This document shows, one piece after another, positions 4,400 through 63,196 of a stretch of DNA of 64,000 nt (within the stretch, counting starts at the first letter, position 1; each line of letters starts with the position of its first letter). A program made the position numbers and the translations under genes. The notes beneath the pieces are model-generated. The model was not told the origin of the DNA. It was given only the letters and a program-made list of their open reading frames with translations, and made no database searches. The stretch comes from Octopus bimaculoides (Eukaryota). The stretch covers positions 4,211,519 through 4,275,518 of the forward strand of contig NC_068994.1 in the NCBI RefSeq assembly GCF_001194135.2, read 5' to 3'.

Positions 4400-5880
4400 T
4401 TTGTCCTTCACATTTTCTCCCTCTCTCGCTTTCATCTCTTAATCTCTCTCTGTTTTTCTCTGTGTTGACTATGGACATAGCTGTCTGTCTATTGATTTTT
4501 CCTCCTTTACCAACGGGATGGGGATGTCACAGTACAACACCACCGCCACCACCACCTATAATTCCTGCCATTCACACAACACCTCCACCGCTTCCTCCTC
4601 CACCTCCATACTTTATTGATTGATCATTGATTGTGAAGCCAGATTTTTACATTACTCAAACTCTCTCTCCCTCTCTCTCATTATCTCTATTCTCATTCCT
4701 AGATGTTTTTTTTCTTCTCTCTCATGCCATAGCTTCACTCCATCTTGCTTGTCATCTCTTTCACACACACGCACCACCACTCTACCATCAAGTCCTCAAC
4801 CGTTACGCTGCACCGCCGCTGCCACCATCTCCACCACCGCCAACTACTGCCATCATTATGCATCATCATTCTTCACACATCCCCTGTTCCCTTCACCGCC
4901 ACCACCACAGCTGTCATCACCGTCACTCCCCTCCTTTTCTTCCATCACCACCACCACTATTGCCAACGCTATTCTATCACCACTCACCCCACCCCCGCCG
5001 CCACCGCATCAAAAGTCCTTCCCCCCACCCCAGTCCATTGCCTCCTGTTGCCATTGATACTACTAACACACACACACACACATATCCAACGCNNNNNNNN
5101 NNNNNNNNNNNNNNNNNNNNNNNNNNNNNNNNNNNNNNNNNNNNNNNNNNNNNNNNNNNNNNNNNNNNNNNNNNNNNNNNNNNNNNNNNNNNNNNNNNNN
5201 NNNNNNNNNNNNNNNNNNNNNNNNNNNNNNNNNNNNNNNNNNNNNNNNNNNNNNNNNNNNNNNNNNNNNNNNNNNNNNNNNNNNNNNNNNNNNNNNNNNN
5301 NNNNNNNNNNNNNNNNNNNNNNNNNNNNNNNNNNNNNNNNNNNNNNNNNNNNNNNNNNNNNNNNNNNNNNNNNNNNNNNNNNNNNNNNNNNNNNNNNCGT
5401 TCTGCCAACAACCACCTCCATCAATGCCAATAGTCTCCTCTACCACCATCACCATCACCACCACCACCACTCTACATCCTGCCAATAGCTCCCCTCCCAC
5501 ACCAGCACCACCACTACCACTACCATTCAAACCACATACCTTGCCAACAGCCATCATCACCCCCACCACACACAGTAGCCACTACTAACTACCATTGTTG
5601 TCATCACCAATCCTTCCTACCATAATATACCTTGCCAATAGCCACTACCTCCAATTTCCTCCTCTTCATCCTTTCCAATAATTTATACCCTGCTGCTAAT
5701 AACTACCAATTCCCCCCACCCCATCGCCCACCACTGCCATTGTCTTCACCCTTCTTACCTTGACAATAGCCACCCCTGGCACCACCATCCATTTACCACA
5801 CATTCTGCCAATAGCTCCTTAGTCTTGAGACCCAAGAATGACCACCACCACCACCACACAACTATCTCTTTATGTTTGTC
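4400..5880. repeat. Degenerate (CAC/CAT/CT)n low-complexity tract
   Basis: Mosaic trinucleotide repeats spanning a gap. Confidence 0.85.
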
Positions 5881-9860: not shown

Positions 9861-12182
9861 ATGGAGAAGACTTCATCTGATAAATCGGGGAAAAACCTGG
9901 TCTCCAACACCAGCGATCGGAACCACCCTCATAGCATTTGTTCAGCAAGCAGCAGCAATGGTACCAGCTGTGCGAATAGTCCGAGCCATGTCACTGCCGC
10001 CATCAACATGCATTCAAAGCAGTTCATGCAGCATTATCCATGGCAGGCTCAACGCTTCCCTCACGTCCCCGACAAGTCGTGGTGCAGTGAGATATACAGC
10101 AACCAGTTTGCTCAGCGTTGCTACTTACAGTCTCATGGTATTTTCCCATCAGCTGGCACTACTGCTGCGGGCAGTTGCTCCGAGAAGGCTTTCCACTGCG
10201 CCGCCAGCTACATGAACCAGTTCACGCAGCGGTGTTTCCTGCAAACGCACGAACGGCTGCAGAACTTCGATAAACAGGCAATGGATGTTAACGACTACAT
10301 GAAACACTTGCATGGGGGCACGTACCAGCCGAAACACTGCCAGGCTGCTAACAACAATAGCATAGTGAGTAGTGGTTGTGGTGGTGGGAGTAGTTGTAGT
10401 GTTGGGGGTGGTGGCAGCTGTAGCATTGGCGGTGGCGGTGGTGGTGGTGGAGGTAGTTGTGGTGGTGTTGGTGGTGGTAGTAGTAGCTGTAGTGTTAACC
10501 TGACCAGTAACAGCAGCTGCGGCAACACCAACCATCGCAATAGCGTATCCAGCAGCAGCAACAACAACAATAACAACACTAACAGCAACAATAACAACAA
10601 CAACAACAACAACAACACCAGCAGCAGTAACGGCAACACATCGGTTTATCCAAAGCAAGTAGCTCAGGTACAGCATGCTGTGAAAACACAGCCACCCTCT
10701 TCACCAAACACAAAGGTGCCACTTCAGCAGCCCCATCACATGCTCCTTCTGCAACCCCCTCCACCCATCGAGAAACCCTTCCACTGTGACCTTTGTCCAA
10801 AACAGTTTGCACGTAGGAATACGTTACAAATGCACAAACGCATTCACACAGGTGAGAAGCTGTTCCATTGCAGCTACTGCGACAAGCGATTCGTGCACCG
10901 AGATAAACTTCAAATACATGAGCGGACTCATACGGGAGAGAAACCGTTTCATTGCACTTACTGCACGAAACAGTTTTCTCGTAAGGACAAATTAAAGATT
11001 CACGAGTGCTCTCACACGGGATTAAAACCTTATCACTGCAGCTACTGCGACAAACGGTTTGTCCAAAGAGAAAAACTTAAGATTCACACAAGGATCCACA
11101 CGGGAGAACGTCCATATTCGTGTGACATTTGTTTCAAGCAATTTGCTCGCGGTGATAAGCTTCAAATTCATCGTAGAACTCACACAGGAGAGAAACCATT
11201 CCACTGTGAATACTGTCCGAAAAACTTTGTCCAGCGTGATAACTTGGTTATACACAGAAGGACCCATACTGGGGAGAAACCATTTTCTTGTGAAGTATGT
11301 TCAAAGCGATTTGCTCGCGGTGATAAGTTGCAAATCCATCGTAGAACACATACGGGAGAGAAACCGTTCCATTGTGAATACTGTCCGAAGACTTTTGCTC
11401 AAAGAGATAATTTAGTCATACATAGAAGAACCCATACAGGAGAGAAGCCCTTCTCCTGTGAATTCTGTCCCAAGCAGTTCTCTCGGAGTGATAAGCTCCA
11501 GTTGCATCGCAGGACTCACACGGGTGAGAAATTGTTCCATTGTAAGTATTGTTCAAAGCAGTTTGTTCAAAGGGACAAACTTCAGATCCATGAACGAACT
11601 CACACAGGCGAGAAGCCGTTTCACTGTGAGATTTGTTCAAAGAAGTTTGCTCGTAAAGACAGGCTGCAAATCCACAAGAAGACGCACACTGGTGAGAAGC
11701 CCTTCCACTGCGACCTTTGCCCGAAGCAGTTTGCACAGCGAGACAACTTGAAAATTCACCGGAGGATACATACCGGTGAGAAGCCTTTCCACTGCGAAAT
11801 CTGTTCGCGCCAGTTTGCCAGAAAGGACAAATTGCAGATTCATCGGAAAACTCACATGATTGAGAAAGTTTCGTTCAACTGCGACATATGCCACAAGCAA
11901 TGTGAATCAAAAGAAATGTTGATGAGTCACCAGCAATTAAATCATGCACCACCACCTCCGCCGCCGCCACCACCACCACCACCACCACCCCTCACCAATA
12001 ACGACACCTCACATTTATGCTGCCAGGTTTGTAATCGGGAATTTGCAACTGTCGAGAAGTTACAAAATCATGAAAAGACACATAAACCAGTGAGAAATAA
12101 TTTTCTGAAACCCACATCGTGTAAGAATATCAAGGAATACACCCCAATGAGTACATTGCTGTGGCAATCTATCTACCCCTAA
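9861..12182 (+). CDS. ZNF-A: multi-C2H2 zinc-finger protein, 773 aa (13 tandem fingers at 10779-11855 plus 2 spaced C-terminal fingers; poly-G, poly-N and poly-P tracts)
   Basis: Uninterrupted ORF starting in aggATGg context. 13 CxxC-x12-H-x3-H units joined mostly by TGEKP-type linkers (84-nt period), then [22 protein letters not shown] and [21 protein letters not shown]. Paralogue of ZNF-D. Confidence 0.95.
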
Positions 12183-19756: not shown

Positions 19757-20902
19757 TTATTTCGTCTGATAAAGCTGTGCTGCCGCTGGGGCAGAGACGG
19801 TGACGGCTCCTTGGTACATTTGAATGGTAGGGAAGATCTGTGTGGTCGCCGGAGATATCTGTATTGTGCTCGGAAAGATATGTGTGACAGGATTCATCTG
19901 GGTGTAGAGCGGATAGACTTGAGTGCCGGCCGGGTAGGTGGCTTGAGTGCTGCTCGCCACCACGTTCGAGTTGAGGTGGTGGCTAACATTCACTCCCGAG
20001 TGCTGTGGTTGGCTGGAGATGTCGACAACCGAGGCACTTGCTTGTTGGCTAGCAACCACTGCGTGTTGTGATGTATTCACACTGACAGCACAACTGGTAT
20101 TCACTCCGGAGTTACTGTTAGCGGCAACTGTAGTGCTGCTAGTCTGTTTGTCTTTGTTAGGTTTATTATTGGTATTTGAAGAACTACTACTACTACTACT
20201 ACTACTGTTACTATTACTACTACTACCACCACCACCACCACCAGTACTGCTGTTGTTGTTGTTACTGCTGCTGATTGGTGTTGGGGAGGCTTCTGTTGTG
20301 ATTGCTGTTGTTGTTGCCAGTGTAACGTTGTTGTTGTTGTTGTTGCTGTTGTTGCGTAGCGGCACGCAGCTTATTTTGATGCCGTTCTTGTTTGGCCGAT
20401 TGTGTTTGACGAGGTGGTCTTTGCGGGAGAAGGCGAACCCACAGATCTGACACCTGAACGGCCGCTCGCCCGTGTGGATCCTCTGGTGCACCTTCAGGTA
20501 CGACCGGTGCACAAACGTTTTGCGACAGATCTCGCAGCTGAATCGCTTCTCCAGCTGATGCGTGCCTCGGTGCCGTGCCAGGTGGTCGCTGCGGTAGAAC
20601 GCGCAGCCGCAGATCTGACACTTGAAAGGGCGCTCACCGGTGTGAATCCTCTTGTGGAGCTTCAAGTGGTCTCTTCGCGACAGGCACTTGCCACAGATGT
20701 CACACTTGTACTGCTTGTCGGATGTTGCCCCCGGTGCCACCGACAGAGCCATGCCACTGTCCCCTGCAATATTAGCAGCAGCCAGCACGACAGCTTGTTG
20801 ATTACCGCTGCTGCTGTTGTGAAGAGTGTGTCCATGGTGATGGTTATGGTGATGGTGATTGTGATGATGATGGCCAATATGATTGCAACTATTTCCCTCC
20901 AT
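19757..20902 (-). CDS. ZNF-B: C2H2 zinc-finger protein, 381 aa (N-terminal His-rich tract, 3 canonical fingers plus 1 lacking the last His, low-complexity N/S/G/Q tail)
   Basis: ORF with [73 protein letters not shown] and [17 protein letters not shown]. Polypyrimidine tract plus AG acceptor just upstream (minus strand, 20917-20912). Confidence 0.92.
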
Positions 20903-25239: not shown

Positions 25240-25270
<31 letters not shown>

Positions 25271-25461
25271 NNNNNNNNNNNNNNNNNNNNNNNNNNNNNN
25301 NNNNNNNNNNNNNNNNNNNNNNNNNNNNNNNNNNNNNNNNNNNNNNNNNNNNNNNNNNNNNNNNNNNNNNNNNNNNNNNNNNNNNNNNNNNNNNNNNNNN
25401 NNNNNNNNNNNNNNNNNNNNNNNNNNNNNNNNNNNNNNNNNNNNNNNNNNNNNNNNNNNNA

Positions 25462-31906: not shown

Positions 31907-33124
31907 TCACATCAATGATTGGATGTTATTGTCAGAGGATCCTTGATTGTCACCTTTTCTCTGACCAACTGTGTAGGAGGGAATGGTCAAGGTACTGGGG
32001 CAGCCATTCCATGTCCACGAAGACGCTGGGGAAGTGTTCCGTTTCCAGTCGTAGTGAGCTTGTGAGGGCATCTGCTGCTGCTGCTGTTGCTGTTGTTGTT
32101 GTGGAGGCTGTTGGTGTGCAGCTGAAGCTATAGAAGCCGTGGTGGTTGTGGACCTCTGTGGCTGTGAGACACTTTTCTGATGGGAACACAGGGATGATGC
32201 AATGTTGTCGAGGTTCAGGGTTGAGAGAACCGGCTGTTTTAGAAGAGTCGTCGTCTTGGATGTTGAAGTGGCTGATGCTGGTTGGTGAGAAGACGAAGAC
32301 ACTGATGCAGCTTGATAAGAATGATGTTGTGCTGAGCTGACACCTGCAGCATTCATTAAAACAGGAGTGTTCAAACCACTAATTGGAATCGTTTTACATA
32401 GTTCGTCAGCAGAAACCGGGGTCAAATGGTGTGAAATGTCATGTCTGTCTCCATGGAGAAATTCCTTTTTTAAAAGATTGCCACACTTTGCATTCGAGAG
32501 TACCGAAGTCATATTGGTTTTGTCGTGAGGATGAATAGTTTGAGAGCAACTGTAATGGTTGGTATGAGTGCGTTCATGCTTGTTTAGGTGGTCTTTCCGA
32601 GAGAAAGCTTTCGTACAAATCTGACAACAAAATGGCTTCTCCCCAGAATGGGTTCGTTGATGGATTTTCAGTTTGTCATTTCGAGAAAAAGCTTTTGGGC
32701 AAATATGGCAGACAAATGGTTTTTCTCCTGAATGAGTTCTGGCATGGTTTTTTAGCTTGTCTTTACGAGCAAAAGCCATAGGGCAGATATCACATGCAAA
32801 CGGGCGTTCTCCTGTGTGTGTCCTTTCATGGATCTTTAGTTTGTCCCTTTCTGGGAACGCTTTACAGCAGAAGACACAGATGAAATGCTTCCCTAATTCG
32901 GGAGCCAATTCGTGTTTCTTCAGATATGCACGGAGGGTAAACCGCTTACGGCAGACATTACATTTGTAGGGTTTCTTGTCGATGTACGACTGCCGGTAGC
33001 TGACGTAGGTGTATGGGGTGGACAAGGGTGGTGTTGATGGGCTCGGGGTTGTGAATGGACCAAAGCCATAGGAGTGATTGCTTCCGACAACGGGTGAGAA
33101 TTGAACCTCTTGGTTTGCATACAT
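31907..33124 (-). CDS. ZNF-C: C2H2 zinc-finger protein, 405 aa (1 atypical plus 4 canonical fingers at 32564-32968; S/T-rich tail with poly-Q10)
   Basis: ORF with TGERP/SGEKP-linked fingers ([84 protein letters not shown]). An in-frame TAG upstream of the ATG closes the ORF. Confidence 0.92.
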   Translation of the reverse strand: MYANQEVQFSPVVGSNHSYGFGPFTTPSPSTPPLSTPYTYVSYRQSYIDKKPYKCNVCRKRFTLRAYLKKHELAPELGKHFICVFCCKAFPERDKLKIHERTHTGERPFACDICPMAFARKDKLKNHARTHSGEKPFVCHICPKAFSRNDKLKIHQRTHSGEKPFCCQICTKAFSRKDHLNKHERTHTNHYSCSQTIHPHDKTNMTSVLSNAKCGNLLKKEFLHGDRHDISHHLTPVSADELCKTIPISGLNTPVLMNAAGVSSAQHHSYQAASVSSSSHQPASATSTSKTTTLLKQPVLSTLNLDNIASSLCSHQKSVSQPQRSTTTTASIASAAHQQPPQQQQQQQQQQMPSQAHYDWKRNTSPASSWTWNGCPSTLTIPSYTVGQRKGDNQGSSDNNIQSLM

Positions 33125-36112: not shown

Positions 36113-36954
36113 GATAAGGAATGGAAGTGGTACATTAAAAAAAAATTTATTCGCATATTTGTAAATTTAGTCGCTAAACCATGAGTTGTATGGTGACCGT
36201 CTGTTTATCGAAATTCCTTTAATTTCGATATGGGACGAAGTAACGTGCGATGTTAATAAACTCGTTTTANNNNNNNNNNNNNNNNNNNNNNNNNNNNNNN
36301 NNNNNNNNNNNNNNNNNNNNNNNNNNNNNNNNNNNNNNNNNNNNNNNNNNNNNNNNNNNNNNNNNNNNNNNNNNNNNNNNNNNNNNNNNNNNNNNNNNNN
36401 NNNNNNNNNNNNNNNNNNNNNNNNNNNNNNNNNNNNNNNNNNNNNNNNNNNNNNNNNNNNNNNNNNNNNNNNNNNNNNNNNNNNNNNNNNNNNNNNNNNN
36501 NNNNNNNNNNNNNNNNNNNNNNNNNNNNNNNNNNNNNNNNNNNNNNNNNNNNNNNNNNNNNNNNNNNNNNNNNNNNNNNNNNNNNNNNNNNNNNNNNNNN
36601 NNNNNNNNNNNNNNNNNNNNNNNNNNNNATATATATATATATAAATGTGTGTGAGCGTGTGTGTAGACGCATGTAAGTACGAGCTTAAACAAAGTACACG
36701 TGACATTTGACCCCAGCATGGATTTATGCAGCATTGCTCACATAACCTACTGACCTTTCCACGGCCCATACAGGCTTTAAACAGAATGTATACATACATT
36801 TTATTTATCTATCTATCTATCTAACAAATGGTTGTGCTGTTCACTATATTTTTCTGTTTGTGACGGACTTCATAACTACTGGCAGCATACGAGAAATATA
36901 CACACATTTGAAGAATAATCTAATATACGCGCTTATGTATATATTTTTTTGCTT

Positions 36955-37402: not shown

Positions 37403-38454
37403 ACATGTGTACGTATGTGTATCTGATTATTAGAAATGATATATAAATTAGTAATAAGCTAGCCACCCTTAAGACATCGTTTCACTTGTCCCACCCGTAA
37501 TTAAACATCCTGGCACATTTATCTCTGTATATCATGTGTGTGCGTGTGTATATATATTCTTGTACTCTTTTATTCATTTCAGCCATGCGGCTGCGATCAT
37601 GCTGGAGCACCACCATATATATATATNNNNNNNNNNNNNNNNNNNNNNNNNNNNNNNNNNNNNNNNNNNNNNNNNNNNNNNNNNNNNNNNNNNNNNNNNN
37701 NNNNNNNNNNNNNNNNNNNNNNNNNNNNNNNNNNNNNNNNNNNNNNNNNNNNNNNNNNNNNNNNNNNNNNNNNNNNNNNNNNNNNNNNNNNNNNNNNNNN
37801 NNNNNNNNNNNNNNNNNNNNNNNNNNNNNNNNNNNNNNNNNNNNNNNNNNNNNNNNNNNNNNNNNNNNNNNNNNNNNNNNNNNNNNNNNNNNNNNNNNNN
37901 NNNNNNNNNNNNNNNNNNNNNNNNNNNNNNNNNNNNNNNNNNNNNNNNNNNNNNNNNNNNNNNNNNNNNNNNNNNNNNNNNNNNNNNNNNNNNNNNNNNN
38001 NNNNNNNNNNNNNNNNNNNNNNNNNNNNNNNNNNNNNNNNNNNNNNNNNNNNNNNNNNNNNNNNNNNNNNNNNNNNNNNNNNNNNNNNNNNNNNNNNNNN
38101 NNNNNNNNNNNNNNNNNNNNNNNNNNNNNNNNNNNNNNNNNNNNNNNNNNNNNNNNNNNNNNNNNNNNNNNNNNNNNNNNNNNNNNNNNNNNNNNNACCC
38201 CCATTCTTAAACACGTTCAACAGCCGCAGCCACCGCCGTGGCTGCCATGGTAAACCACTTCACACCACCACCACCACCACCACCGCCGCCGCCACAATCG
38301 TATTAAACCAGTTCATACACCCCGCACTAAACTATATAATACCTCCACCATCGACACCACATTAAACTGGTATACCCACCGCCATCTCCTCAACCACCAC
38401 GGTTAAACCACTATACTTCCCCACAGGCCCTGTTCTCCGTCGCTAACGACGACG

Positions 38455-55505: not shown

Positions 55506-57746
55506 GAGGCAAGTGAAATCGAAATCGAACTAAATACGACTGGCACCCATGCCAACATCGTCTCCTTCATTGGACACGAAACTCAGCTTGCAAAGACCTG
55601 TTGGGGCAAGCGAAAGCGAAATCGTGACGGCACCTGTGCCCAGCGTCACCTTACTGGCACTTGTGCCAGTGGCACATGTAAAGACATTTGAGCGAGATCG
55701 TAGCCAGTGCTATGCAGACTTCAAAGACCTATGATGCCTCCTCCTCCTCCTCCTGTTCAAAACAAAATCAAAAACAAAAACACACTGAATGAAGTAAATT
55801 AAGTTCAGCCATGATTTTCTGTCATCTCACCAGGTTCACAGTGTTCTCGCTTCACGTAGTTTGAACTTGTTTCAGATTGTGATATACTTAAAACGACAGA
55901 AACAAACAATCACCATTGACTAATTAAAGTTACTGAATCAAAGGTTGATTAATTATATCCAAAGCAACAATGAAACAAAATAGCAAATCACGAGGGGGGG
56001 ATGGGACGAAAGAGGTGGTGGCAGTGGTGTGATTGAGAGTTCAAAGATTACAGATATTGTTCGATAGCAAGTAACTCGCTTACCCCAAGGTCTGAAGCAT
56101 TCCCATTATGAAACCGAAGCCGACAACTTGGAATGATAATAAATTCAAGGTTGATTTATTATCCTTTATCATTTACTTGTTTCTGTCATTAGTCTGCGAC
56201 CATGCTGGGGCACCACCTTGAAGAATTTCTAGTTGAATAGACTGCAGTAGGAATTTTTTTTTTTTTTTCGTAAACATGGTATTTATTTGGTTGGTCCCTT
56301 TTACTGAACTGCTAATGTTACAGGGATGTAAACAAACCCTTTAGATTTTAAGCCAGCAATATATGCAACTCAAATTTCTACCTATCTTGCATTCAAACTG
56401 GCTAGATCCAGCTTTTAACACCTACCCAACAATGCCATGACCATACTGGAGCACTCTGCACCTAGTATGTATCTCTGACCAAGCAATCTTACAATCAAAA
56501 ATGTTCCATTCCATTCACAGAGGCTCCCTCCTGTGTGTTGTATATATTCTAGAAGAATCCCAGTTGAATGCCATCTTCTGTAAAGAAATGTCACTGACAG
56601 ATACGTACATGTGGGCGTGTGAGGACCTTGACTGGCTCCCATGGTAGTGGTACGTAAAAAGCACCATCCGAACGTGGTTGATGCCAGTACNNNNNNNNNN
56701 ACCTTGACTGGCTCCCATGCCGGTAGCATGTAAAAAGTACCTACTACATTCTTGTAGTGGTTGGCATCAGGAAGGGCATCCAGATGTAGAAATCTTGCCA
56801 GATCAGATTGGAGTCTGATGCAGCCTTCTGGCTTGCCAGTCATCAGTCAAACCTTCCAACCCATGCCAGCATGGAAAGTGGACATTAAATGATGATGATG
56901 ACATATATATATATATAGAGAGAGATGTGTTTACATTCCTTGCTGACGTTACAAATGGTTACTCTGCAGTTTCCAATAATGCTAGAGAGACCCAGGCTTG
57001 AGAAATAAAAACAAGAAGGAATTTGCAACAGGAAGTGACCTCTGGTTGAAAAATCCTGGTTCAAATTACTCTTCTTCATTCAACACACGTCACCCAAATC
57101 AACAAGTTGGAGGTAGGAATTTTTAACACTGTCTCACCAGGTTCCTGCTGTATGAGGAACAGCTTAAAATGTCATCCCTGGTGGACTAAAAATAGACAAC
57201 TGGTCACATTGTAGCTTTGTAATTATAAGTGTTTATGAGTCATTCGTTCCCTCCATTGCTGTTGTTTACTTTTTTAAACAGAACAAAAAAAAAAAAAAAA
57301 AAAANNNNNNNNNNNNNNNNNNNNNNNNNNNNNNNNNNNNNNNNNNNNNNNNNNNNNNNNNNNNNNNNNNNNNNNNNNNNNNNNNNNNNNNNNNNNNNNN
57401 NNNNNNNNNNNNNNNNNNNNNNNNNNNNNNNNNNNNNNNNNNNNNNNNNNNNNNNNNNNNNNNNNNNNNNNNNNNNNNNNNNNNNNNNNNNNNNNNNNNN
57501 NNNNNNNNNNNNNNNNNNNNNNNNNNNNNNNNNNNNNNNNNNNNNNNNNNNNNNNNNNNNNNNNNNNNNNNNNNNNNNNNNNNNNNNNNNNNNNNNNNNN
57601 NNNNNNNNNNNNNNNNNNNNNNNNNNNNNNNNNNNNNNNNNNNNNNNNNNNNNNNNNNNNNNNNNNNNNNNNNNNNNNNNNNNNNNNNNNNNNNNNNNNN
57701 NNNNNNNNNNNNNNNNNNNNNNNNNNNNNNNNNNNNNNNNNNNNNN

Positions 57747-58742: not shown

Positions 58743-58791
<49 letters not shown>

Positions 58792-59176
58792 NNNNNNNNN
58801 NNNNNNNNNNNNNNNNNNNNNNNNNNNNNNNNNNNNNNNNNNNNNNNNNNNNNNNNNNNNNNNNNNNNNNNNNNNNNNNNNNNNNNNNNNNNNNNNNNNN
58901 NNNNNNNNNNNNNNNNNNNNNNNNNNNNNNNNNNNNNNNNNNNNNNNNNNNNNNNNNNNNNNNNNNNNNNNNNNNNNNNNNNNNNNNNNNNNNNNNNNNN
59001 NNNNNNNNNNNNNNNNNNNNNNNNNNNNNNNNNNNNNNNNNNNNNNNNNNNNNNNNNNNNNNNNNNNNNNNNNNNNNNNNNNNNNNNNNNNNNNNNNNNN
59101 NNNNNNNNNNNNNNNNNNNNNNNNNNNNNNNNNNNNNNNNNNNNNNNNNNNNNNNNNNNNNNNNNNNNNNNNNNNN

Positions 59177-59224
<48 letters not shown>

Positions 59225-59349: not shown

Positions 59350-61326
59350 TCACCAGGGACAGAGGATAGAGCTAACCGGAGTATACTCTCTTAAACTTTT
59401 GCAAGAATTTGGCTTCAAGAAATTGTTTTTCACAGAGCCATGACTCTTCTGATGACTCTGCAGCTTGAGTGCAGACGCAAATTGCCGTGGGCACATGTCG
59501 CATTGCAACAGAGGTTCAGTGTGTATCTTCATGTGCAGCAGGACAGCTTCCTTGTCCGGGAACTTCTGCAGACAAACATGGCACTCGTGTAGTGCTGAAT
59601 GATCTTCGTTGTGCTGATGAGCAACAGCAGGAACCGTAATGATGCTCTCGTGGTTATTCATGGCCAATATGTGGGCGTCCTCGGTGCCGTTGCTGACCTG
59701 CATTCTCTGCTGTTGCACAAGCAAGTCTTTCTTCATGCAGATATCACAGGGTTCGGTGTGGCTCTTGTCAGGTGTGTTGTTGCTGTTGAGATTATTTAAG
59801 TGGATACGTCTGTGTATCTGTAATTTGTCACTGCGATTAAAATCACGGGAACAGAATTCACAGTGGAAAGGTTTCTCTCCAGTGTGAATCCGACGATGGA
59901 CCTGAAGCTTGTCCTTTCTGGCAAACTGCCGGCTGCAAAGATCACAGTGGAAAGGTTTCTCTCCAGTATGTGTCCTTTCGTGTATCATAAGCTTATCTCT
60001 CTGGATGAACTGTTTCGGGCAATAATTACACTGAAAAGGTCTGTCCCCTGTGTGGATTTTCCGATGCAGTTGCAGCTTATCACGGCGGGAAAAGCATTTT
60101 GTACAGATCTCACAAGCAAATGGTTTCTCACCTGTGTGAGTACGTCTGTGGATGACCAAGTTGTCCTTTTGGGCAAAAGATTTGGGACAAATGTCACAGG
60201 CAAAGGGTTTCTCCCCAGTATGTGTCCTACGATGAACCTGGAGTTTGTCCCCACGAGAGAACTGCTTACAACAAATATCGCAAGAGAAAGGACGCTCTCC
60301 GGTGTGAATTCTCTCATGAATCTTCAGTTTCTCTCTTTGAATGAATCTTTTGCCACAATAGGTGCAAGGAAACGGTCTTTCTCCAGTGTGAATCCTTCGA
60401 TGTATTTGGAGTTTATCTCCTCGTGAAAACTGTTTCAAACAAAACTCGCAGTGATAGGGTTTTGCACCGGTATGGACAGTCTCGTGAATCTTCAGCTTAT
60501 CTTTGCGGGAGAACTGCTTCGGACAATAACTGCAGTGGAATGGTTTCTCTCCTGTGTGTGTCCTCTCGTGAATCTGCAACTTGTCTCGGTGAACAAACTG
60601 TTTGGCACAATAGTTACACTGGAACAACTTCTCACCCGTGTGAATCCGTTTATGGATCTGCAACGTATTCCTTCTTGTGAACTTCTTGGGACACAGATCA
60701 CAATGGAATGGTTTATCTGGCACTGTTTGCGATGACAACAGAAGGTGACCCGATGTAGAAATACGACTCACCATACTGGTAGACGTCAGGTCCTTCTTGA
60801 AGAGGGCCATGGGTTTGTGTTGAATATGGATGGGGTCAGCATTACAGTAAGTATCGCTGCAGTTGTTCTCCTTGCCAGCAATTGCATTGCAGTCATTGTT
60901 CCGTTTCTCTGCGACATCAGCAGCAAGTGACGGTTGTTTCTCAAGAACTCCATTAGTAATGGCGCAGCCGTTCTCTCCAGTACACTCTTGTAATGACGAC
61001 GGGGTTAAGAAACAGTTCGGCATAAACTGTTTTCCGTAAATATCATCAATAGAGATTTTCTGATTTGTTGGAAATAATCCATGTGTCTTTAAGTAACAAC
61101 GCTGAAGGAATTGGTTACTCAAGATCTGATGTGTAAAGTGGGGTGGTGGTGGTTTGGGGCTTGTAGCCGGTGGTCTCCGATGAGCTGCTGGTATTGTGTA
61201 GGGTTGAGCAAATTGTCTTTCATATGCAATGGCATGTGAAGGAGGTCGGTCAGATGTTGCTACCTCGTTACTTTTCTTAATGATTGCTTCCTCGGTTATT
61301 TTTGACAGGTTAGTTTTATCCATCAT
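59350..61326 (-). CDS. ZNF-D: multi-C2H2 zinc-finger protein, 658 aa from the first ATG (11 tandem fingers at 59800-60708, a vestigial CDIC and 2 C-terminal fingers)
   Basis: The ORF track starts at GTG 61401, but the first ATG is at 61326 (MMDKT..., compare ZNF-A MEKT). 11 linked fingers. Strong acceptor ttttttctattttcag|g gives an exon start at 61484. Paralogue of ZNF-A. Confidence 0.95.
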   Translation of the reverse strand: MMDKTNLSKITEEAIIKKSNEVATSDRPPSHAIAYERQFAQPYTIPAAHRRPPATSPKPPPPHFTHQILSNQFLQRCYLKTHGLFPTNQKISIDDIYGKQFMPNCFLTPSSLQECTGENGCAITNGVLEKQPSLAADVAEKRNNDCNAIAGKENNCSDTYCNADPIHIQHKPMALFKKDLTSTSMVSRISTSGHLLLSSQTVPDKPFHCDLCPKKFTRRNTLQIHKRIHTGEKLFQCNYCAKQFVHRDKLQIHERTHTGEKPFHCSYCPKQFSRKDKLKIHETVHTGAKPYHCEFCLKQFSRGDKLQIHRRIHTGERPFPCTYCGKRFIQREKLKIHERIHTGERPFSCDICCKQFSRGDKLQVHRRTHTGEKPFACDICPKSFAQKDNLVIHRRTHTGEKPFACEICTKCFSRRDKLQLHRKIHTGDRPFQCNYCPKQFIQRDKLMIHERTHTGEKPFHCDLCSRQFARKDKLQVHRRIHTGEKPFHCEFCSRDFNRSDKLQIHRRIHLNNLNSNNTPDKSHTEPCDICMKKDLLVQQQRMQVSNGTEDAHILAMNNHESIITVPAVAHQHNEDHSALHECHVCLQKFPDKEAVLLHMKIHTEPLLQCDMCPRQFASALKLQSHQKSHGSVKNNFLKPNSCKSLREYTPVSSILCPW

Positions 61327-61536
61327 GTTTCTAGAGAATTTCACCTCGAATTGACTCAAAGATGGATGAACAACAACAGAACAGGATTCAATACTCTTCA
61401 CAGGGAAAAATAAATATTTGAATTCTCTATTTTAACAGGAACTTCAGCAACTGATCCATTTAACTTGTTATAAAAGGGAGATACCTGAAAATAGAAAAAA
61501 AAAACACATTAACATTCATGGAGATATATATATATA

Positions 61537-61768: not shown

Positions 61769-63196
61769 NNNNNNNNNNNNNNNNNNNNNNNNNNNNNNNN
61801 NNNNNNNNNNNNNNNNNNNNNNNNNNNNNNNNNNNNNNNNNNNNNNNNNNNNNNNNNNNNNNNNNNNNNNNNNNNNNNNNNNNNNNNNNNNNNNNNNNNN
61901 NNNNNNNNNNNNNNNNNNNNNNNNNNNNNNNNNNNNNNNNNNNNNNNNNNNNNNNNNNNNNNNNNNNNNNNNNNNNNNNNNNNNNNNNNNNNNNNNNNNN
62001 NNNNNNNNNNNNNNNNNNNNNNNNNNNNNNNNNNNNNNNNNNNNNNNNNNNNNNNNNNNNNNNNNNNNNNNNNNNNNNNNNNNNNNNNNNNNNNNNNNNN
62101 NNNNNNNNNNNNNNNNNNNNNNNNNNNNNNNNNNNNNNNNNNNNNNNNNNNNNNNNNNNNNNNNNNNNNNNNNNNNNNNNNNNNNNNNNNNNNNNNNNNN
62201 NNNNNNNNNNNNNNNNNNNNNNNNNNNNNNNNNNNNNNNNNNNNNNNNNNNNNNNNNNNNNNNNNNNNNNNNNNNNNNNATATATATATATATATATATA
62301 TACATACATACATACACACACATCTGCATATAAATGTATTTGACAAAACATATCACAACATACTTTTTTTGTCTTATCAGTTTACAAGGATACTAAATTT
62401 TACATGCAAAAATACGTACCACCATTTAATCTAGAATTTGGATCAAATGAATGTAAGAAAGATCAAAGCAATGAGAAATACTGCAATGGTTTAGTCCCAG
62501 GCTGGGGCTGACTGAGGAAACTGGCTTAACCCTTTTGGTTAAGTCTGCTTCCCTAAGACTTGCTACGTGGCTCAATGTGTGATGCATTTTTTTCATTAGT
62601 AATTGAAACAAAAGCAGTACATTTCAACACAAATATGGTAACAAAAGGGTTAAAGTGATCTAAATTAAAACCATCCATCAAAATTCCATGTTAATTTACG
62701 TTCTGAGCATCAGCTTAATAACAGAAAGGTATTTGACTAAATTTTTCATTATTTTAAAATTAATTGACACACAAAGGCAGAGAATTCCACATCGACATCA
62801 ACCAATGTGTGTTTACTCCTTCCTTATCATTTTCTGATGGCAGGCTTCGATCAAAAAAGACCTGGCTGCTATTTTTAGCATGTTAAGTGTCCACATAGAG
62901 GCTCAGATCCCGACTCTCAGACAGGGATATAAATTGCTCTGATGGTATGGGCAAGGCAGTGAGCAGTTTCACTTTGTCTCATTCCTAAATAGTATACAGC
63001 AACTTTAGTGCAGTAATTTACATCAGCTTAATTAACAATAGTTCGTTTACACAATTAATTATGATAAAATATGCCCCAGCGAAATATCTAATTAAATTCT
63101 TTTTCTTTTTAAATATTATAAATGGAAAAACATTCATCAGGAGATATTTTGAGTTGTAATGGAAATGAACATACACACTCGTGTGTGCTGTGTGTG

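What the first reader, a model, noticed from the sequence alone, without database searches (positions are those of the whole stretch)
10092..10256. Conserved N-terminal motif SNQFxQRCYLxxHGxFP in ZNF-A and ZNF-D: an exapted dead zinc finger?
Seen: [20 protein letters not shown] (10092-10148) versus D ILSNQFLQRCYLKTHGLFP (61125-61069) is 14/19 identical, while the surrounding N-termini do not align. A has a second copy, [25 protein letters not shown] (10182-10256), and both proteins have KQFM remnants. The motif mirrors the finger helix ([12 protein letters not shown]) but has lost CxxC and carries Cys-Tyr/Phe at helix positions 2-3. Inference: ancestral fingers were converted into a conserved non-DNA-binding module (protein interaction or atypical Cys/His metal site). 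It may be a cephalopod effector domain filling the role KRAB or ZAD play elsewhere. I do not recognise it as a named domain.
Basis: partly seen in the sequence, partly recalled or inferred. Interest (0 to 1): 0.78.

Follow-up and report, generated by a model that had tools for sequence, protein, structure and literature searches.

The report
Conserved dead zinc fingers in octopus ZNFs
Two old paralogous octopus zinc-finger genes begin with three decayed, zinc-less copies of their own DNA-binding finger, and one of these copies has been kept as strictly as the working fingers, which points to a new peptide-type job, but it marks only a small gene family and is not a general cephalopod counterpart of KRAB.

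Summary
A (9861-12182 +) and D (59350-61326 -) share SNQFxQRCYLxxHGxFP, 14/19 identical. The window is Octopus bimaculoides chromosome CM046614.1.

The motif is the core of the second of three collinear 28-aa units that descend from C2H2 fingers and have lost three of the four zinc ligands:
- A ligand-masked finger PSSM picks out exactly these units against shuffled controls.
- hhalign gives 91% probability, E=1e-6, in perfect register.
- The 28-aa spacing is kept.

The motif is under purifying selection. Against the Argonauta ortholog its dN is 0.014, equal to the finger array (0.016), while the flanks show 0.15-0.25 (P=1e-4). Half of the identical A/D codons differ synonymously, so gene conversion does not explain the identity.

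Pfam and PDB give no match. AlphaFold2 predicts a disordered N-terminus with a tentative helix over the motif.

An exhaustive HMMER search of 1.84 billion representative proteins found the module only in D orthologs and one paralog (ZNF431). Looser Tyr-for-Cys units, together with a shared C-terminal tail, mark a small linked family (A, D, ZNF28/45-like, ZNF431).

The exapted dead-finger idea is supported. A KRAB/ZAD-like effector for cephalopod ZNFs in general is not. Function is inferred, most likely a helical protein-binding peptide. Interest is moderate.

The parts
9861..12182 (+). Gene A: intact single-exon ORF of 773 aa. It holds three N-terminal dead-finger units, a low-complexity Gly/Ser/Cys and Asn tract, 13 tandem canonical C2H2 fingers, 2 C-terminal fingers and a conserved tail. 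It is not present as an annotated protein in the collection.
9996..10079 (+). A rep1 (aa 46-73, [28 protein letters not shown]): first dead-finger unit
   Evidence: One of the three top ligand-masked PSSM windows. Its Phe lies 28 aa before that of rep2.
10080..10163 (+). A rep2 (aa 74-101), the unit that contains the reported motif [19 protein letters not shown] (10092-10148). Finger register: Cys1->Ser (with a Cys one residue earlier), Cys2->Tyr, His1 kept, His2->Pro, helix +2/+3 = Cys-Tyr.
10182..10277 (+). A rep3 with its linker remnant (aa 108-139, [32 protein letters not shown]). It keeps Cys1 and His1, has a 1-aa insertion in the knuckle, Cys2->Tyr and His2->Gln.
10779..11855 (+). A canonical tandem C2H2 finger array (aa 307-665)
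12096..12179 (+). A C-terminal tail [28 protein letters not shown], the second family signature
59350..61326 (-). Gene D: single-exon CDS of 658 aa starting at MMDKT. It is annotated in O. bimaculoides (CM046614.1, about 4.27 Mb). It holds three dead-finger units, 11 tandem fingers, 2 C-terminal fingers and the tail.
61156..61239 (-). D rep1 (aa 30-57, SHAIAYERQFAQPYTIPAAHRRPPATSP)
   Evidence: (dN 0.041 vs Argonauta)
61054..61137 (-). D rep2 (aa 64-91, FTHQILSNQFLQRCYLKTHGLFPTNQKI), containing the reported motif (61069-61125). Finger register: Cys1->His, Cys2->Leu, His1 kept, His2->Pro.
   Evidence: Best PSSM window in D, beaten by 0/1000 shuffles. dN 0.014 vs Argonauta. Tentative helix at residues 65-81.
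60970..61053 (-). D rep3 (aa 92-119, SIDDIYGKQFMPNCFLTPSSLQECTGEN), exactly 28 aa after rep2
59800..60708 (-). D canonical tandem finger array (aa 207-509)
59353..59427 (-). D C-terminal tail NNFLKPNSCKSLREYTPVSSILCPW

Best explanation
The motif is the strand-2/helix core of the second of three zinc-less 28-aa units that precede the working finger arrays of two old paralogous O. bimaculoides ZNF genes, A and D.

Shown:
- The units descend from C2H2 fingers of the same family.
- They lost the zinc ligands before A and D duplicated. Both share the derived states: Cys1->His/Ser, Cys2->Leu/Tyr, His2->Pro, Asp(+2)->Cys.
- Since then rep2 has been held under purifying selection as strong as that on the DNA-binding fingers, while the sequence around it drifts.
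- Related Tyr-for-Cys units (D-phi-Y-x-K-x-F-x-Q-R) and a shared extreme C-terminal tail define a small linked family: A, D, ZNF28/45-like and ZNF431.

Inferred:
- The unit no longer folds as a zinc finger.
- It is a short amphipathic helix-forming peptide in an otherwise disordered N-terminus.
- It works as a protein-binding module, recruiting a co-regulator or mediating self- or paralog association, which gives these sequence-specific DNA binders their regulatory output.

It is a family-specific exaptation, not the general effector domain of the cephalopod ZNF expansion.
For: Finger ancestry:
- A PSSM built from 26 canonical A/D fingers, with the four ligand columns masked, ranks rep1-3 as the top windows. 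A's maximum is reached by 5/1000 shuffles, D's rep2 by 0/1000, and the top-3 sum by 0/1000.
- hhalign of 20 degenerate units against 23 canonical fingers gives 90.9%, E=1.1e-6, columns 2-27 to 2-27, with Tyr aligned to Cys2.
- Phe-to-Phe spacing is exactly 28 aa for A rep1->2 and for D and Argonauta rep2->3.
- A rep3 keeps an EKAFHC linker remnant.

Loss of finger identity: no Pfam finger hit on any N-terminus at E<=10.

Constraint:
- D vs Argonauta: rep2 dN 0.014 and finger array 0.016, against flanks of 0.15-0.25, with dS about 0.8-2.
- 1 nonsynonymous change observed against 11.5 expected; Poisson P=1.3e-4, Fisher P=2.9e-4.
- A vs D: rep2 dN 0.32 against about 1.0 in the flanks, with synonymous sites saturated.
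- 7 of 14 identical motif codons differ synonymously.

Structure: AlphaFold2 gives pLDDT below 50 for D 1-203, with a helix at 65-81 over the motif. In A, the only stretch with pLDDT >=50 is the motif, and it is helical.

Restricted distribution.
Against: - Function is entirely inferred. No partner, expression or reporter data exist.
- The AlphaFold2 helices are low-confidence (pLDDT 33-55) and come from a 4-sequence alignment.
- Conserved Cys residues are unusual for a plain disordered interaction peptide and may point to metal or redox chemistry instead: +2 in rep2 and rep3 of A, D and Argonauta, and in rep3 of ZNF431.
- The standard finger HMM gives D's units no significant score on its own (39/300 shuffles do as well).
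- The units fed to hhalign were chosen by a finger-like anchor pattern, so that test is not fully independent.
- Only two orthologous species were available for D and none for A, so the dN/dS estimates rest on few substitutions and dS is near saturation.
Confidence: 0.55

Rival explanations
1. Atypical metal (or redox) site. The conserved Cys(+2) and His(+7) of rep2, together with Cys(+2) of rep3 and a further downstream Cys or His, form a non-classical cross-repeat zinc site. On this reading the 'dead' fingers are re-wired rather than zinc-less.
For: - Invariant across A, D, the Logan Octopus ortholog and Argonauta: C77, H82 and C105 (D numbering), plus C115 in the D lineage.
- A has a symmetric arrangement, C87-x4-H92 ... 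C125-x4-H130.
- ZNF431 rep3 also keeps the Cys (QNCYF).
- The Cys replaces the family's usual Asp at +2, which needs two nucleotide changes, and it is then conserved.
- Cys is rare in disordered regions (general knowledge).
Against: - The fourth ligand is not at a conserved position: spacing C-x9-C in D, C-x8-C in Argonauta, C-x4-H in A.
- The rep2-rep3 spacing differs between A (38 aa) and D (28 aa).
- In the classical fold, helix position +2 points away from the zinc site.
- AlphaFold2 predicts no compact fold, although that is weak evidence with 4 sequences.
- No match to any solved metal-binding domain.
Confidence: 0.17
2. Accessory part of the nucleic-acid-binding apparatus. The dead fingers extend or modulate the canonical array, for example through backbone or RNA contacts or through intramolecular docking that gates DNA binding, rather than recruiting other proteins.
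For: - The units keep the finger's Lys/Asn-Gln-Phe-x-Gln-Arg segment, including Gln(-1) and Arg(+1), which in working fingers lie at the DNA-facing start of the helix.
- Their conservation tracks that of the array.
Against: - The units are separated from the first real finger by about 90 (D) to about 170 (A) poorly conserved residues, in A low-complexity ones.
- Without zinc the beta-beta-alpha scaffold that positions those residues is not expected to form.
- No fold is predicted.
Confidence: 0.12
3. One reading: a cephalopod-wide ZNF effector domain, analogous to KRAB, ZAD or FiNZ, attached to many members of the expanded octopus C2H2 repertoire.
For: - It sits N-terminal to a poly-finger array, as KRAB, ZAD and FiNZ do.
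- It is about the same size as FiNZ (28 aa, PMC10547256).
- Looser versions of the unit occur in other cephalopod ZNFs (P0006, P0007, P0058, P0125).
Against: - The exhaustive profile search found the module in only two 50%-identity clusters.
- ZNF genes B and C in the same window lack it.
- The carriers are slow-evolving genes with omega about 0.04, not rapidly diversifying arrays.
- The motif has no acidic residues, unlike KRAB and FiNZ.
- The cephalopod C2H2 survey reports no such domain.
Confidence: 0.06
4. Neutral relic. The units are ordinary decaying fingers of the kind seen next to many poly-ZNF arrays, and the A/D similarity reflects recent gene conversion or chance.
For: Degenerate fingers beside arrays are common and are usually regarded as non-functional (PMC2865497). 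rep3 and rep1 are visibly decaying in D.
Against: - rep2 dN equals that of the working fingers across the Octopus-Argonauta split, with saturated dS (P about 1e-4).
- Synonymous divergence inside the identical codons rules out recent conversion.
- The A-D duplication is old, with pS saturated.
Confidence: 0.03

Closest known systems
Degenerate ('dead') C2H2 fingers flanking the arrays of vertebrate KRAB-ZNF and other poly-ZNF proteins
   Same: - Same origin and position: finger-derived units in the same exon and frame, N-terminal to the array.
- The finger period and the Phe/Leu/linker skeleton are retained.
- Zinc ligands are lost.
   Different: Such fingers are generally treated as non-functional decay products (PMC2865497). 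Here one unit is conserved as tightly as the DNA-binding fingers across an Octopus-Argonauta divergence with saturated dS. It also shares specific derived residues (Cys-Tyr at +2/+3, Gly-x-Phe-Pro in place of the second His) between ancient paralogs.
Lineage-specific N-terminal ZNF-associated domains: KRAB, SCAN, ZAD, and FiNZ of cyprinid fish (PMC10547256)
   Same: A short conserved sequence N-terminal to a poly-finger array, with no similarity to other domains. FiNZ is also about 28 aa.
   Different: - No sequence relationship: Pfam KRAB, SCAN and ZAD models do not match.
- Not acidic.
- Derived from the finger itself rather than from an unrelated sequence.
- Present on a handful of slow-evolving paralogs rather than on hundreds of fast-evolving genes.
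- Not predicted to fold.
C2H2 fingers used for protein-protein contacts, such as the Drosophila single-finger dimerisation modules (PMC12774644, title and abstract seen) and the Ikaros C-terminal fingers (the latter recalled from memory)
   Same: Finger-derived modules that do something other than bind DNA, within zinc-finger transcription factors.
   Different: Those modules keep all four zinc ligands and the beta-beta-alpha fold. The octopus units have lost three of the four ligands and are not recognised by any finger model.
Xenopus finger-associated repeats/boxes (FAR, FAX). Recalled from memory only; no paper could be retrieved.
   Same: Repeated N-terminal units attached to a subfamily of poly-finger proteins.
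   Different: This is a lead, not a test.

Membership tests
C2H2 zinc finger (Pfam PF00096 and relatives) | Four zinc ligands, C-x2-4-C ... H-x3-5-H | tested here: not met
   rep2: Cys1->His (D) or Ser (A), Cys2->Leu or Tyr, His2->Pro; only His1 is kept. rep3 of A keeps Cys1 and His1 only. rep3 of D keeps none.
C2H2 zinc finger (Pfam PF00096 and relatives) | Match to the family profile HMM | tested here: not met
   No finger family reported on the isolated N-termini of A, D, P0006, P0058 or P0125 even at E<=10. In an own HMM built from A/D fingers, A's sum score was beaten by 0/300 shuffles and D's best score by 39/300.
C2H2 zinc finger (Pfam PF00096 and relatives) | Common descent from fingers: non-ligand skeleton, 28-aa period, linker | tested here: met
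   Ligand-masked PSSM; hhalign 90.9%, E=1.1e-6, in 1:1 register; exact 28-aa spacing; EKAFHC linker remnant.
C2H2 zinc finger (Pfam PF00096 and relatives) | Beta-beta-alpha fold | tested here: inconclusive
   AlphaFold2 predicts only a low-confidence helix and no hairpin. The alignment has only 4 sequences and metals are not modelled.
KRAB / SCAN / ZAD / BTB (named ZNF-associated domains) | Match to the Pfam model (PF01352, PF02023, PF07776, PF00651) | tested here: not met
   These models are absent from the Pfam hits of the full proteins (E<=1) and of the N-termini (E<=10).
FiNZ (cyprinid N-terminal ZNF-associated domain) | 28-aa Glu-rich N-terminal sequence on hundreds of fast-evolving cyprinid ZNFs (PMC10547256) | tested here: not met
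   The motif has 0 acidic residues, is found on very few genes, and its carriers have omega about 0.04. A direct sequence comparison with FiNZ was not run.
Lineage-wide ZNF effector domain (functional class) | Present on a large fraction of the lineage's expanded poly-ZNF genes | tested here: not met
   Only P0041 (the D-ortholog cluster) and P0125 are true hits among 1.84e9 representatives. B and C in the window lack it. None of about 220 non-cephalopod poly-ZNFs carries the unit. A scan of a full octopus proteome was not possible.
Lineage-wide ZNF effector domain (functional class) | Autonomous transcriptional repression or activation, or co-factor binding | not testable with these tools
   Needs a reporter assay and an interaction assay.
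Degenerate-finger relics of poly-ZNF genes | Finger-derived, adjacent to the array in the same reading frame, with one or more ligands lost | tested here: met
Degenerate-finger relics of poly-ZNF genes | Relaxed or neutral evolution, as usually assumed for such relics | tested here: not met
   rep2 dN 0.014 against flanks of 0.15-0.25, P=1.3e-4. rep1 is also constrained (0.041). rep3 is not (0.15).

The most novel reading that the evidence does not exclude
The rep2-rep3 pair is not zinc-less. It is a re-wired two-unit metal or redox module (Cys+2/His+7 of rep2 plus Cys+2 of rep3 plus a downstream Cys/His) that evolved from two adjacent classical fingers. Together with the co-occurring extreme C-terminal [EN][YF]xPxSxxL-W tail, it would define a previously undescribed cephalopod transcription-factor family with its own cofactor-recruitment mechanism.
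Probability: 0.12. Interest if true: 0.6.

Novelty: new variant of a known kind. Interest (0 to 1): 0.36.

Why it matters
Degenerate fingers beside poly-ZNF arrays are normally written off as debris. This is a clean case in which one such unit has been kept as strictly as the working fingers since before an ancient gene duplication and across the Octopus-Argonauta split. The finger scaffold was therefore recycled into something else, most likely a co-factor-binding peptide.

It gives a concrete, small and testable handle on how at least one conserved octopod ZNF family exerts its regulatory effect, in a clade where no ZNF effector domain is known. The handle consists of a 19-aa motif, a few invariant residues and a matching C-terminal tail.

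It does not explain the large cephalopod C2H2 expansion, so its reach is limited to this family.

Tried and rejected
- Word-indexed homolog search with the N-terminal alignment found nothing, not even D's known orthologs, so that index is not sensitive for short queries.
- Full-length searches with A and D were swamped by generic poly-ZNFs. They were useful only for picking out the cephalopod relatives, and no ortholog of A turned up.
- Pfam scans of the full proteins and of the isolated N-termini reported only finger families on the arrays and nothing on the N-termini.
- A PDB sequence search with the module profile gave 0 hits at E<=10.
- A standard finger HMM scanned over the N-termini is dominated by the ligand columns. 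It was significant for A only, so I replaced it with a ligand-masked PSSM.
- AlphaFold2 models of both modules had too low confidence to justify a fold search, so none was run.
- I tried to name the species behind the Logan samples SRR11869390 and ERR3431203. ERR3431204 is Mytilus coruscus, but ERR3431203 is not listed by that project, so the taxon of P0058 is left open.
- The Argonauta locus flanks (+/-10 kb) contain no ortholog of C or A, so synteny beyond D could not be tested.
- By eye, the motif resembles neither the eh1 (FxIxxIL) nor the Sin3-interaction consensus. This was not pursued.
- Literature on the Xenopus FAR/FAX repeats could not be retrieved, and the 2015 octopus genome paper is not held.
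Full report
WHAT IS THERE

The window is eukaryotic: runs of N and microsatellites are present. It carries four single-exon C2H2 zinc-finger ORFs: A (9861-12182 +, 773 aa), B (19757-20902 -), C (31907-33124 -) and D. D's listed ORF (59350-61401 -) begins at a bacterial-code GTG.

An exact-sequence look-up places D, as a 658-aa protein starting MMDKT at 61326, on Octopus bimaculoides chromosome CM046614.1 at about 4.27 Mb. Homology with the Argonauta hians ortholog begins 8 nt upstream of that ATG and ends at the stop codon, so D is a single coding exon with that start.

The quoted peptides are at the quoted coordinates and are 14/19 identical.

A AND D ARE OLD PARALOGS WITH COLLINEAR N-TERMINI

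BLASTP gives E=3e-176 over the arrays and a separate N-terminal HSP with E=8e-8.

Alignment shows the same order of elements in both proteins:
- PSH
- rep1: [KR]QFxQxY
- rep2: SNQFxQRCYLxxHGxFP
- rep3: YxxQFxxxCFL...LQ
- a variable linker, which in A holds Gly/Ser/Cys and Asn low-complexity runs
- the tandem fingers
- two C-terminal fingers
- a conserved tail, NNFLKPxSCKxxxEYTPxSxxL

A's 'second copy' is the homolog of D's rep3, and the two 'KQFM' strings belong to different units.

THE UNITS ARE DEAD FINGERS

Anchoring on the conserved Phe puts the units in register with the canonical unit F-x-C-x2-C-x3-F-x5-L-x2-H-x3-H-TGEKP. The states are:

| Finger position | D rep2 | A rep2 |
|---|---|---|
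| aromatic at -1 | Phe | Trp |
| Cys1 | His | Ser (with a Cys one residue earlier) |
| Cys2 | Leu | Tyr |
| Lys-Gln-Phe-x-Gln-Arg | kept as Asn-Gln-Phe-x-Gln-Arg | same |
| Asp-Asn/Lys at helix +2/+3 | Cys-Tyr | Cys-Tyr |
| Leu(+4) | kept | kept |
| His1 | kept | kept |
| His2 | Pro | Pro |

Phe-to-Phe spacing is exactly 28 residues for A rep1->rep2 and for rep2->rep3 in D and in Argonauta. A rep3 is preceded by EKAFHC, a remnant of the TGEKPFxC linker.

Three tests of ancestry were run:
- A standard HMM of 26 canonical A/D fingers finds its best N-terminal hits exactly on the units. It is significant only for A (sum score beaten by 0/300 shuffles; D's best score by 39/300), because the missing ligands dominate the score.
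- A PSSM of the same fingers with the four ligand columns masked, slid ungapped over the N-termini, ranks rep1, rep2 and rep3 as the top windows in A. Rep2 is the top window in D and Argonauta. The maximum was reached by 5/1000 shuffles for A, 0/1000 for D and 3/1000 for Argonauta. The top-3 sum was reached by 0/1000 in six of seven proteins and by 2/1000 in P0125.
- hhalign of 20 degenerate units against 23 canonical fingers gives 90.9% probability and E=1.1e-6, with columns 2-27 aligned to 2-27 and the units' near-invariant Tyr on the second Cys. The units were picked with a finger-like anchor, so this third test is supportive rather than independent.

Pfam no longer recognises any finger in these N-termini, even at E<=10.

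THE MOTIF IS UNDER PURIFYING SELECTION

Two orthologs of D were recovered with their DNA:
- a Logan contig from another Octopus (97% aa identity, dS 0.35)
- Argonauta hians 'zinc finger protein 2 homolog' (84% aa identity)

Nei-Gojobori estimates for D vs Argonauta:

| Region | dN |
|---|---|
| rep2 (29 codons) | 0.014 (1 nonsynonymous change) |
| rep1 | 0.041 |
| finger array | 0.016 |
| segment before rep1 | 0.25 |
| segment between rep1 and rep2 | 0.20 |
| rep3 | 0.15 |
| linker | 0.16 |

Local dS is about 0.5-2 and is near saturation. At the flank rate, 11.5 nonsynonymous changes were expected in rep2 and 1 was seen (Poisson P=1.3e-4, Fisher P=2.9e-4).

Between the paralogs A and D, synonymous sites are saturated. 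dN is 0.20 in the array, 0.19 in the tail, 0.32 in rep2, 0.47 in rep3, 0.61 in rep1 and about 1.0 in the flanks. A is therefore a selectively maintained gene, and rep2 is the best-kept N-terminal segment there too.

Seven of the 14 identical motif codons differ synonymously between A and D, against 33 of 54 in fingers 1-2. Recent gene conversion does not explain the identity.

NOT A KNOWN DOMAIN AND NOT A PREDICTED FOLD

- Pfam reports only finger families on the arrays and nothing on the N-termini.
- The module profile has no PDB sequence match at E<=10.
- AlphaFold2 on D 1-262 (4-sequence alignment) gives pLDDT 75-84 for the two canonical fingers and below 50 for residues 1-203. Tentative helices lie at 65-81, which is the motif, and at 93-105, which is rep3.
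- On A's module the only stretch with pLDDT >=50 is the rep2 motif. It is again helical, and rep3 is helical as well.
- No hairpin is predicted. I judged the models too weak for a fold search.

HOW WIDE IS IT?

An exhaustive HMMER search with the rep1-rep3 profile against 1.84 billion 50%-identity representatives returned eight hits:
- P0041, the cluster of D orthologs (2e-46).
- P0125 (2e-5), which is O. bimaculoides 'zinc finger protein 431'. Its N-terminus reads DMYSKQFAQR ... DVYGNPFTQNCYFPLTPERMQL, a clear rep3 homolog.
- Five proteins whose canonical fingers match the QF..L..H skeleton.
- One repetitive junk translation.

With full-length D as the query, nothing lies between the Argonauta ortholog (84%) and generic ZNFs at about 50%.

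A looser, Tyr-for-Cys version of the unit, [FY]-x-x-[DN]-phi-Y-x-K-[DEQ]-[FYL]-x-Q-R, is repeated eight or more times at 21-31-aa intervals in the N-termini of ZNF28/45-like proteins:
- Carriers are from O. bimaculoides, O. vulgaris, O. sinensis and Argonauta, plus a more divergent Logan protein, P0058, of unresolved species.
- Some of these units carry EKAFH or EKTFH linker remnants.
- The first unit still reads LCSKICGQDCPQR...EKP.
- The first ~130 residues, which hold these units, are better conserved than the rest of the N-terminus: 84% against 66% for Octopus-Argonauta, and 51% against 28% with P0058.

They occur only in the 12 cephalopod proteins and in none of about 220 other poly-ZNFs. 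In 170 kb of fetched loci they occur only inside these genes.

The family is loosely linked. D and ZNF431 lie 0.54 Mb apart on CM046614.1. The Argonauta D ortholog and ZNF45-like lie 1.4 Mb apart on one scaffold. Genes B and C in the window have no such units.

INTERPRETATION

Shown:
- finger ancestry
- loss of canonical ligands
- ligand loss before the A/D duplication
- strong, localised purifying selection on rep2 (and on rep1 in the D lineage)
- restriction to a small octopod-centred paralog family
- no match to any described domain

Inferred: the mode of action. The most economical reading is a short amphipathic helix-forming peptide, embedded in a disordered N-terminus, that binds another protein (a co-regulator, or self or paralog). 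In other words, the finger helix has been recycled as an interaction motif.

The main rival is a re-wired Cys/His metal or redox site spanning rep2 and rep3. It is suggested by the invariant Cys(+2)/His(+7) of rep2 and Cys(+2) of rep3. It is weakened by the variable spacing between the units and by the non-conserved position of the fourth ligand.

A role in modulating nucleic-acid binding is possible but is not favoured by the long, variable linker.

The neutral-relic reading is contradicted by the substitution data.

The broad 'cephalopod KRAB/ZAD equivalent' reading is contradicted by the distribution and by the slow evolution of the carrier genes.

COMPARISON WITH THE LITERATURE

- Degenerate fingers next to arrays are well known in KRAB-ZNFs and are described as non-functional (PMC2865497).
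- Lineage-specific N-terminal ZNF domains such as FiNZ are known (PMC10547256).
- The 2025 survey of cephalopod C2H2 expansions never uses the terms 'N-terminal', 'degenerate' or 'motif' (PMC12513265).

I therefore rate this a new variant of a known kind: a selectively retained dead finger that defines a small, undescribed family. It is of moderate interest and not categorically new.

Noticed in passing
window 9861-12182 (+): Gene A is an intact 773-aa, 15-finger ORF under purifying selection (dN 0.20 vs D in the array, with saturated dS). Its exact sequence is not in the 15-billion-protein collection, and no protein more than 57% identical to it was returned. It appears to be unannotated in O. 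bimaculoides, and no ortholog was found.
   Followed up: partly
window 12096-12179 (+) and 59353-59427 (-); also L001 11924-11959, L004 12347-12358, L006 13064-13075: A second family signature is a conserved tail at the extreme C-terminus, just before the stop codon. It reads NNFLKPxSCKxxxEYTPxSxxL(W/CPW) in A and D, KPIHEFPSVTNYLW in ZNF28/45-like and LSPMNNYLWQL in ZNF431. It co-occurs with the N-terminal dead-finger units in all 12 family proteins and in none of about 220 other poly-ZNFs. In A vs D, 14 of its 15 identical codons differ synonymously.
   Followed up: partly
window 31907-33124 (-) and 59350-61326 (-): An older O. bimaculoides gene model (XP_014771513, 'zinc finger protein 585A-like', 1089 aa) sits in the same 90% cluster as D (658 aa) and as a 405-aa protein that matches gene C. 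Its length suggests a former fusion of C and D into one model. C's O. vulgaris counterpart is named 'replication initiator 1-like'.
   Followed up: no
window 10368-10628 (+) and 11949-11990 (+): A carries long low-complexity insertions that D lacks. One is a Gly/Ser/Cys-rich tract followed by a poly-Asn tract between the dead fingers and the array. The other is a run of 14 prolines that splits the two C-terminal fingers.
   Followed up: no
window 19757-20902 (-): Gene B is a 381-aa, 4-finger protein with a His-rich N-terminus ([15 protein letters not shown]) and long Asn/Ser/Gly low-complexity tracts. Its exact sequence is also absent from the protein collection. It has no dead-finger units.
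   Followed up: no
P0006/P0235 residues 10-37 (ZNF28/45-like; Argonauta copy in locus L006): The very first N-terminal unit of the ZNF28/45-like proteins, LCSKICGQDCPQRHNLQMQKFSNLMEKP, still has a C-x3-C knuckle and an EKP linker but has lost both histidines. It is the top ligand-masked PSSM window (10.6) and is conserved in P0058. This looks like an intermediate stage of finger decay that has been kept.
   Followed up: partly
P0121 (hit): The second-best hit of the exhaustive search is a 1709-aa repetitive, GC-rich-looking translation with many copies of NELVKRCILHHAQLFPQDLAPDALYSRA. I treated it as a spurious match to the QRCYL..H..FP segment, but it was not examined further.
   Followed up: no
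L006 6537-8934: A reverse-transcriptase (RVT_1) gene fragment lies about 1 kb upstream of the Argonauta ZNF45-like gene.
   Followed up: no
window, e.g. 5100-5400, 25270-25460, 36270-36640, 37620-38200, 57300-57740, 58790-59180, 61770-62270: There are 2,885 N bases in assembly gaps, typically bordered by TA/CA-type microsatellites. These produce most of the long spurious ORFs in the six-frame list.
   Followed up: no
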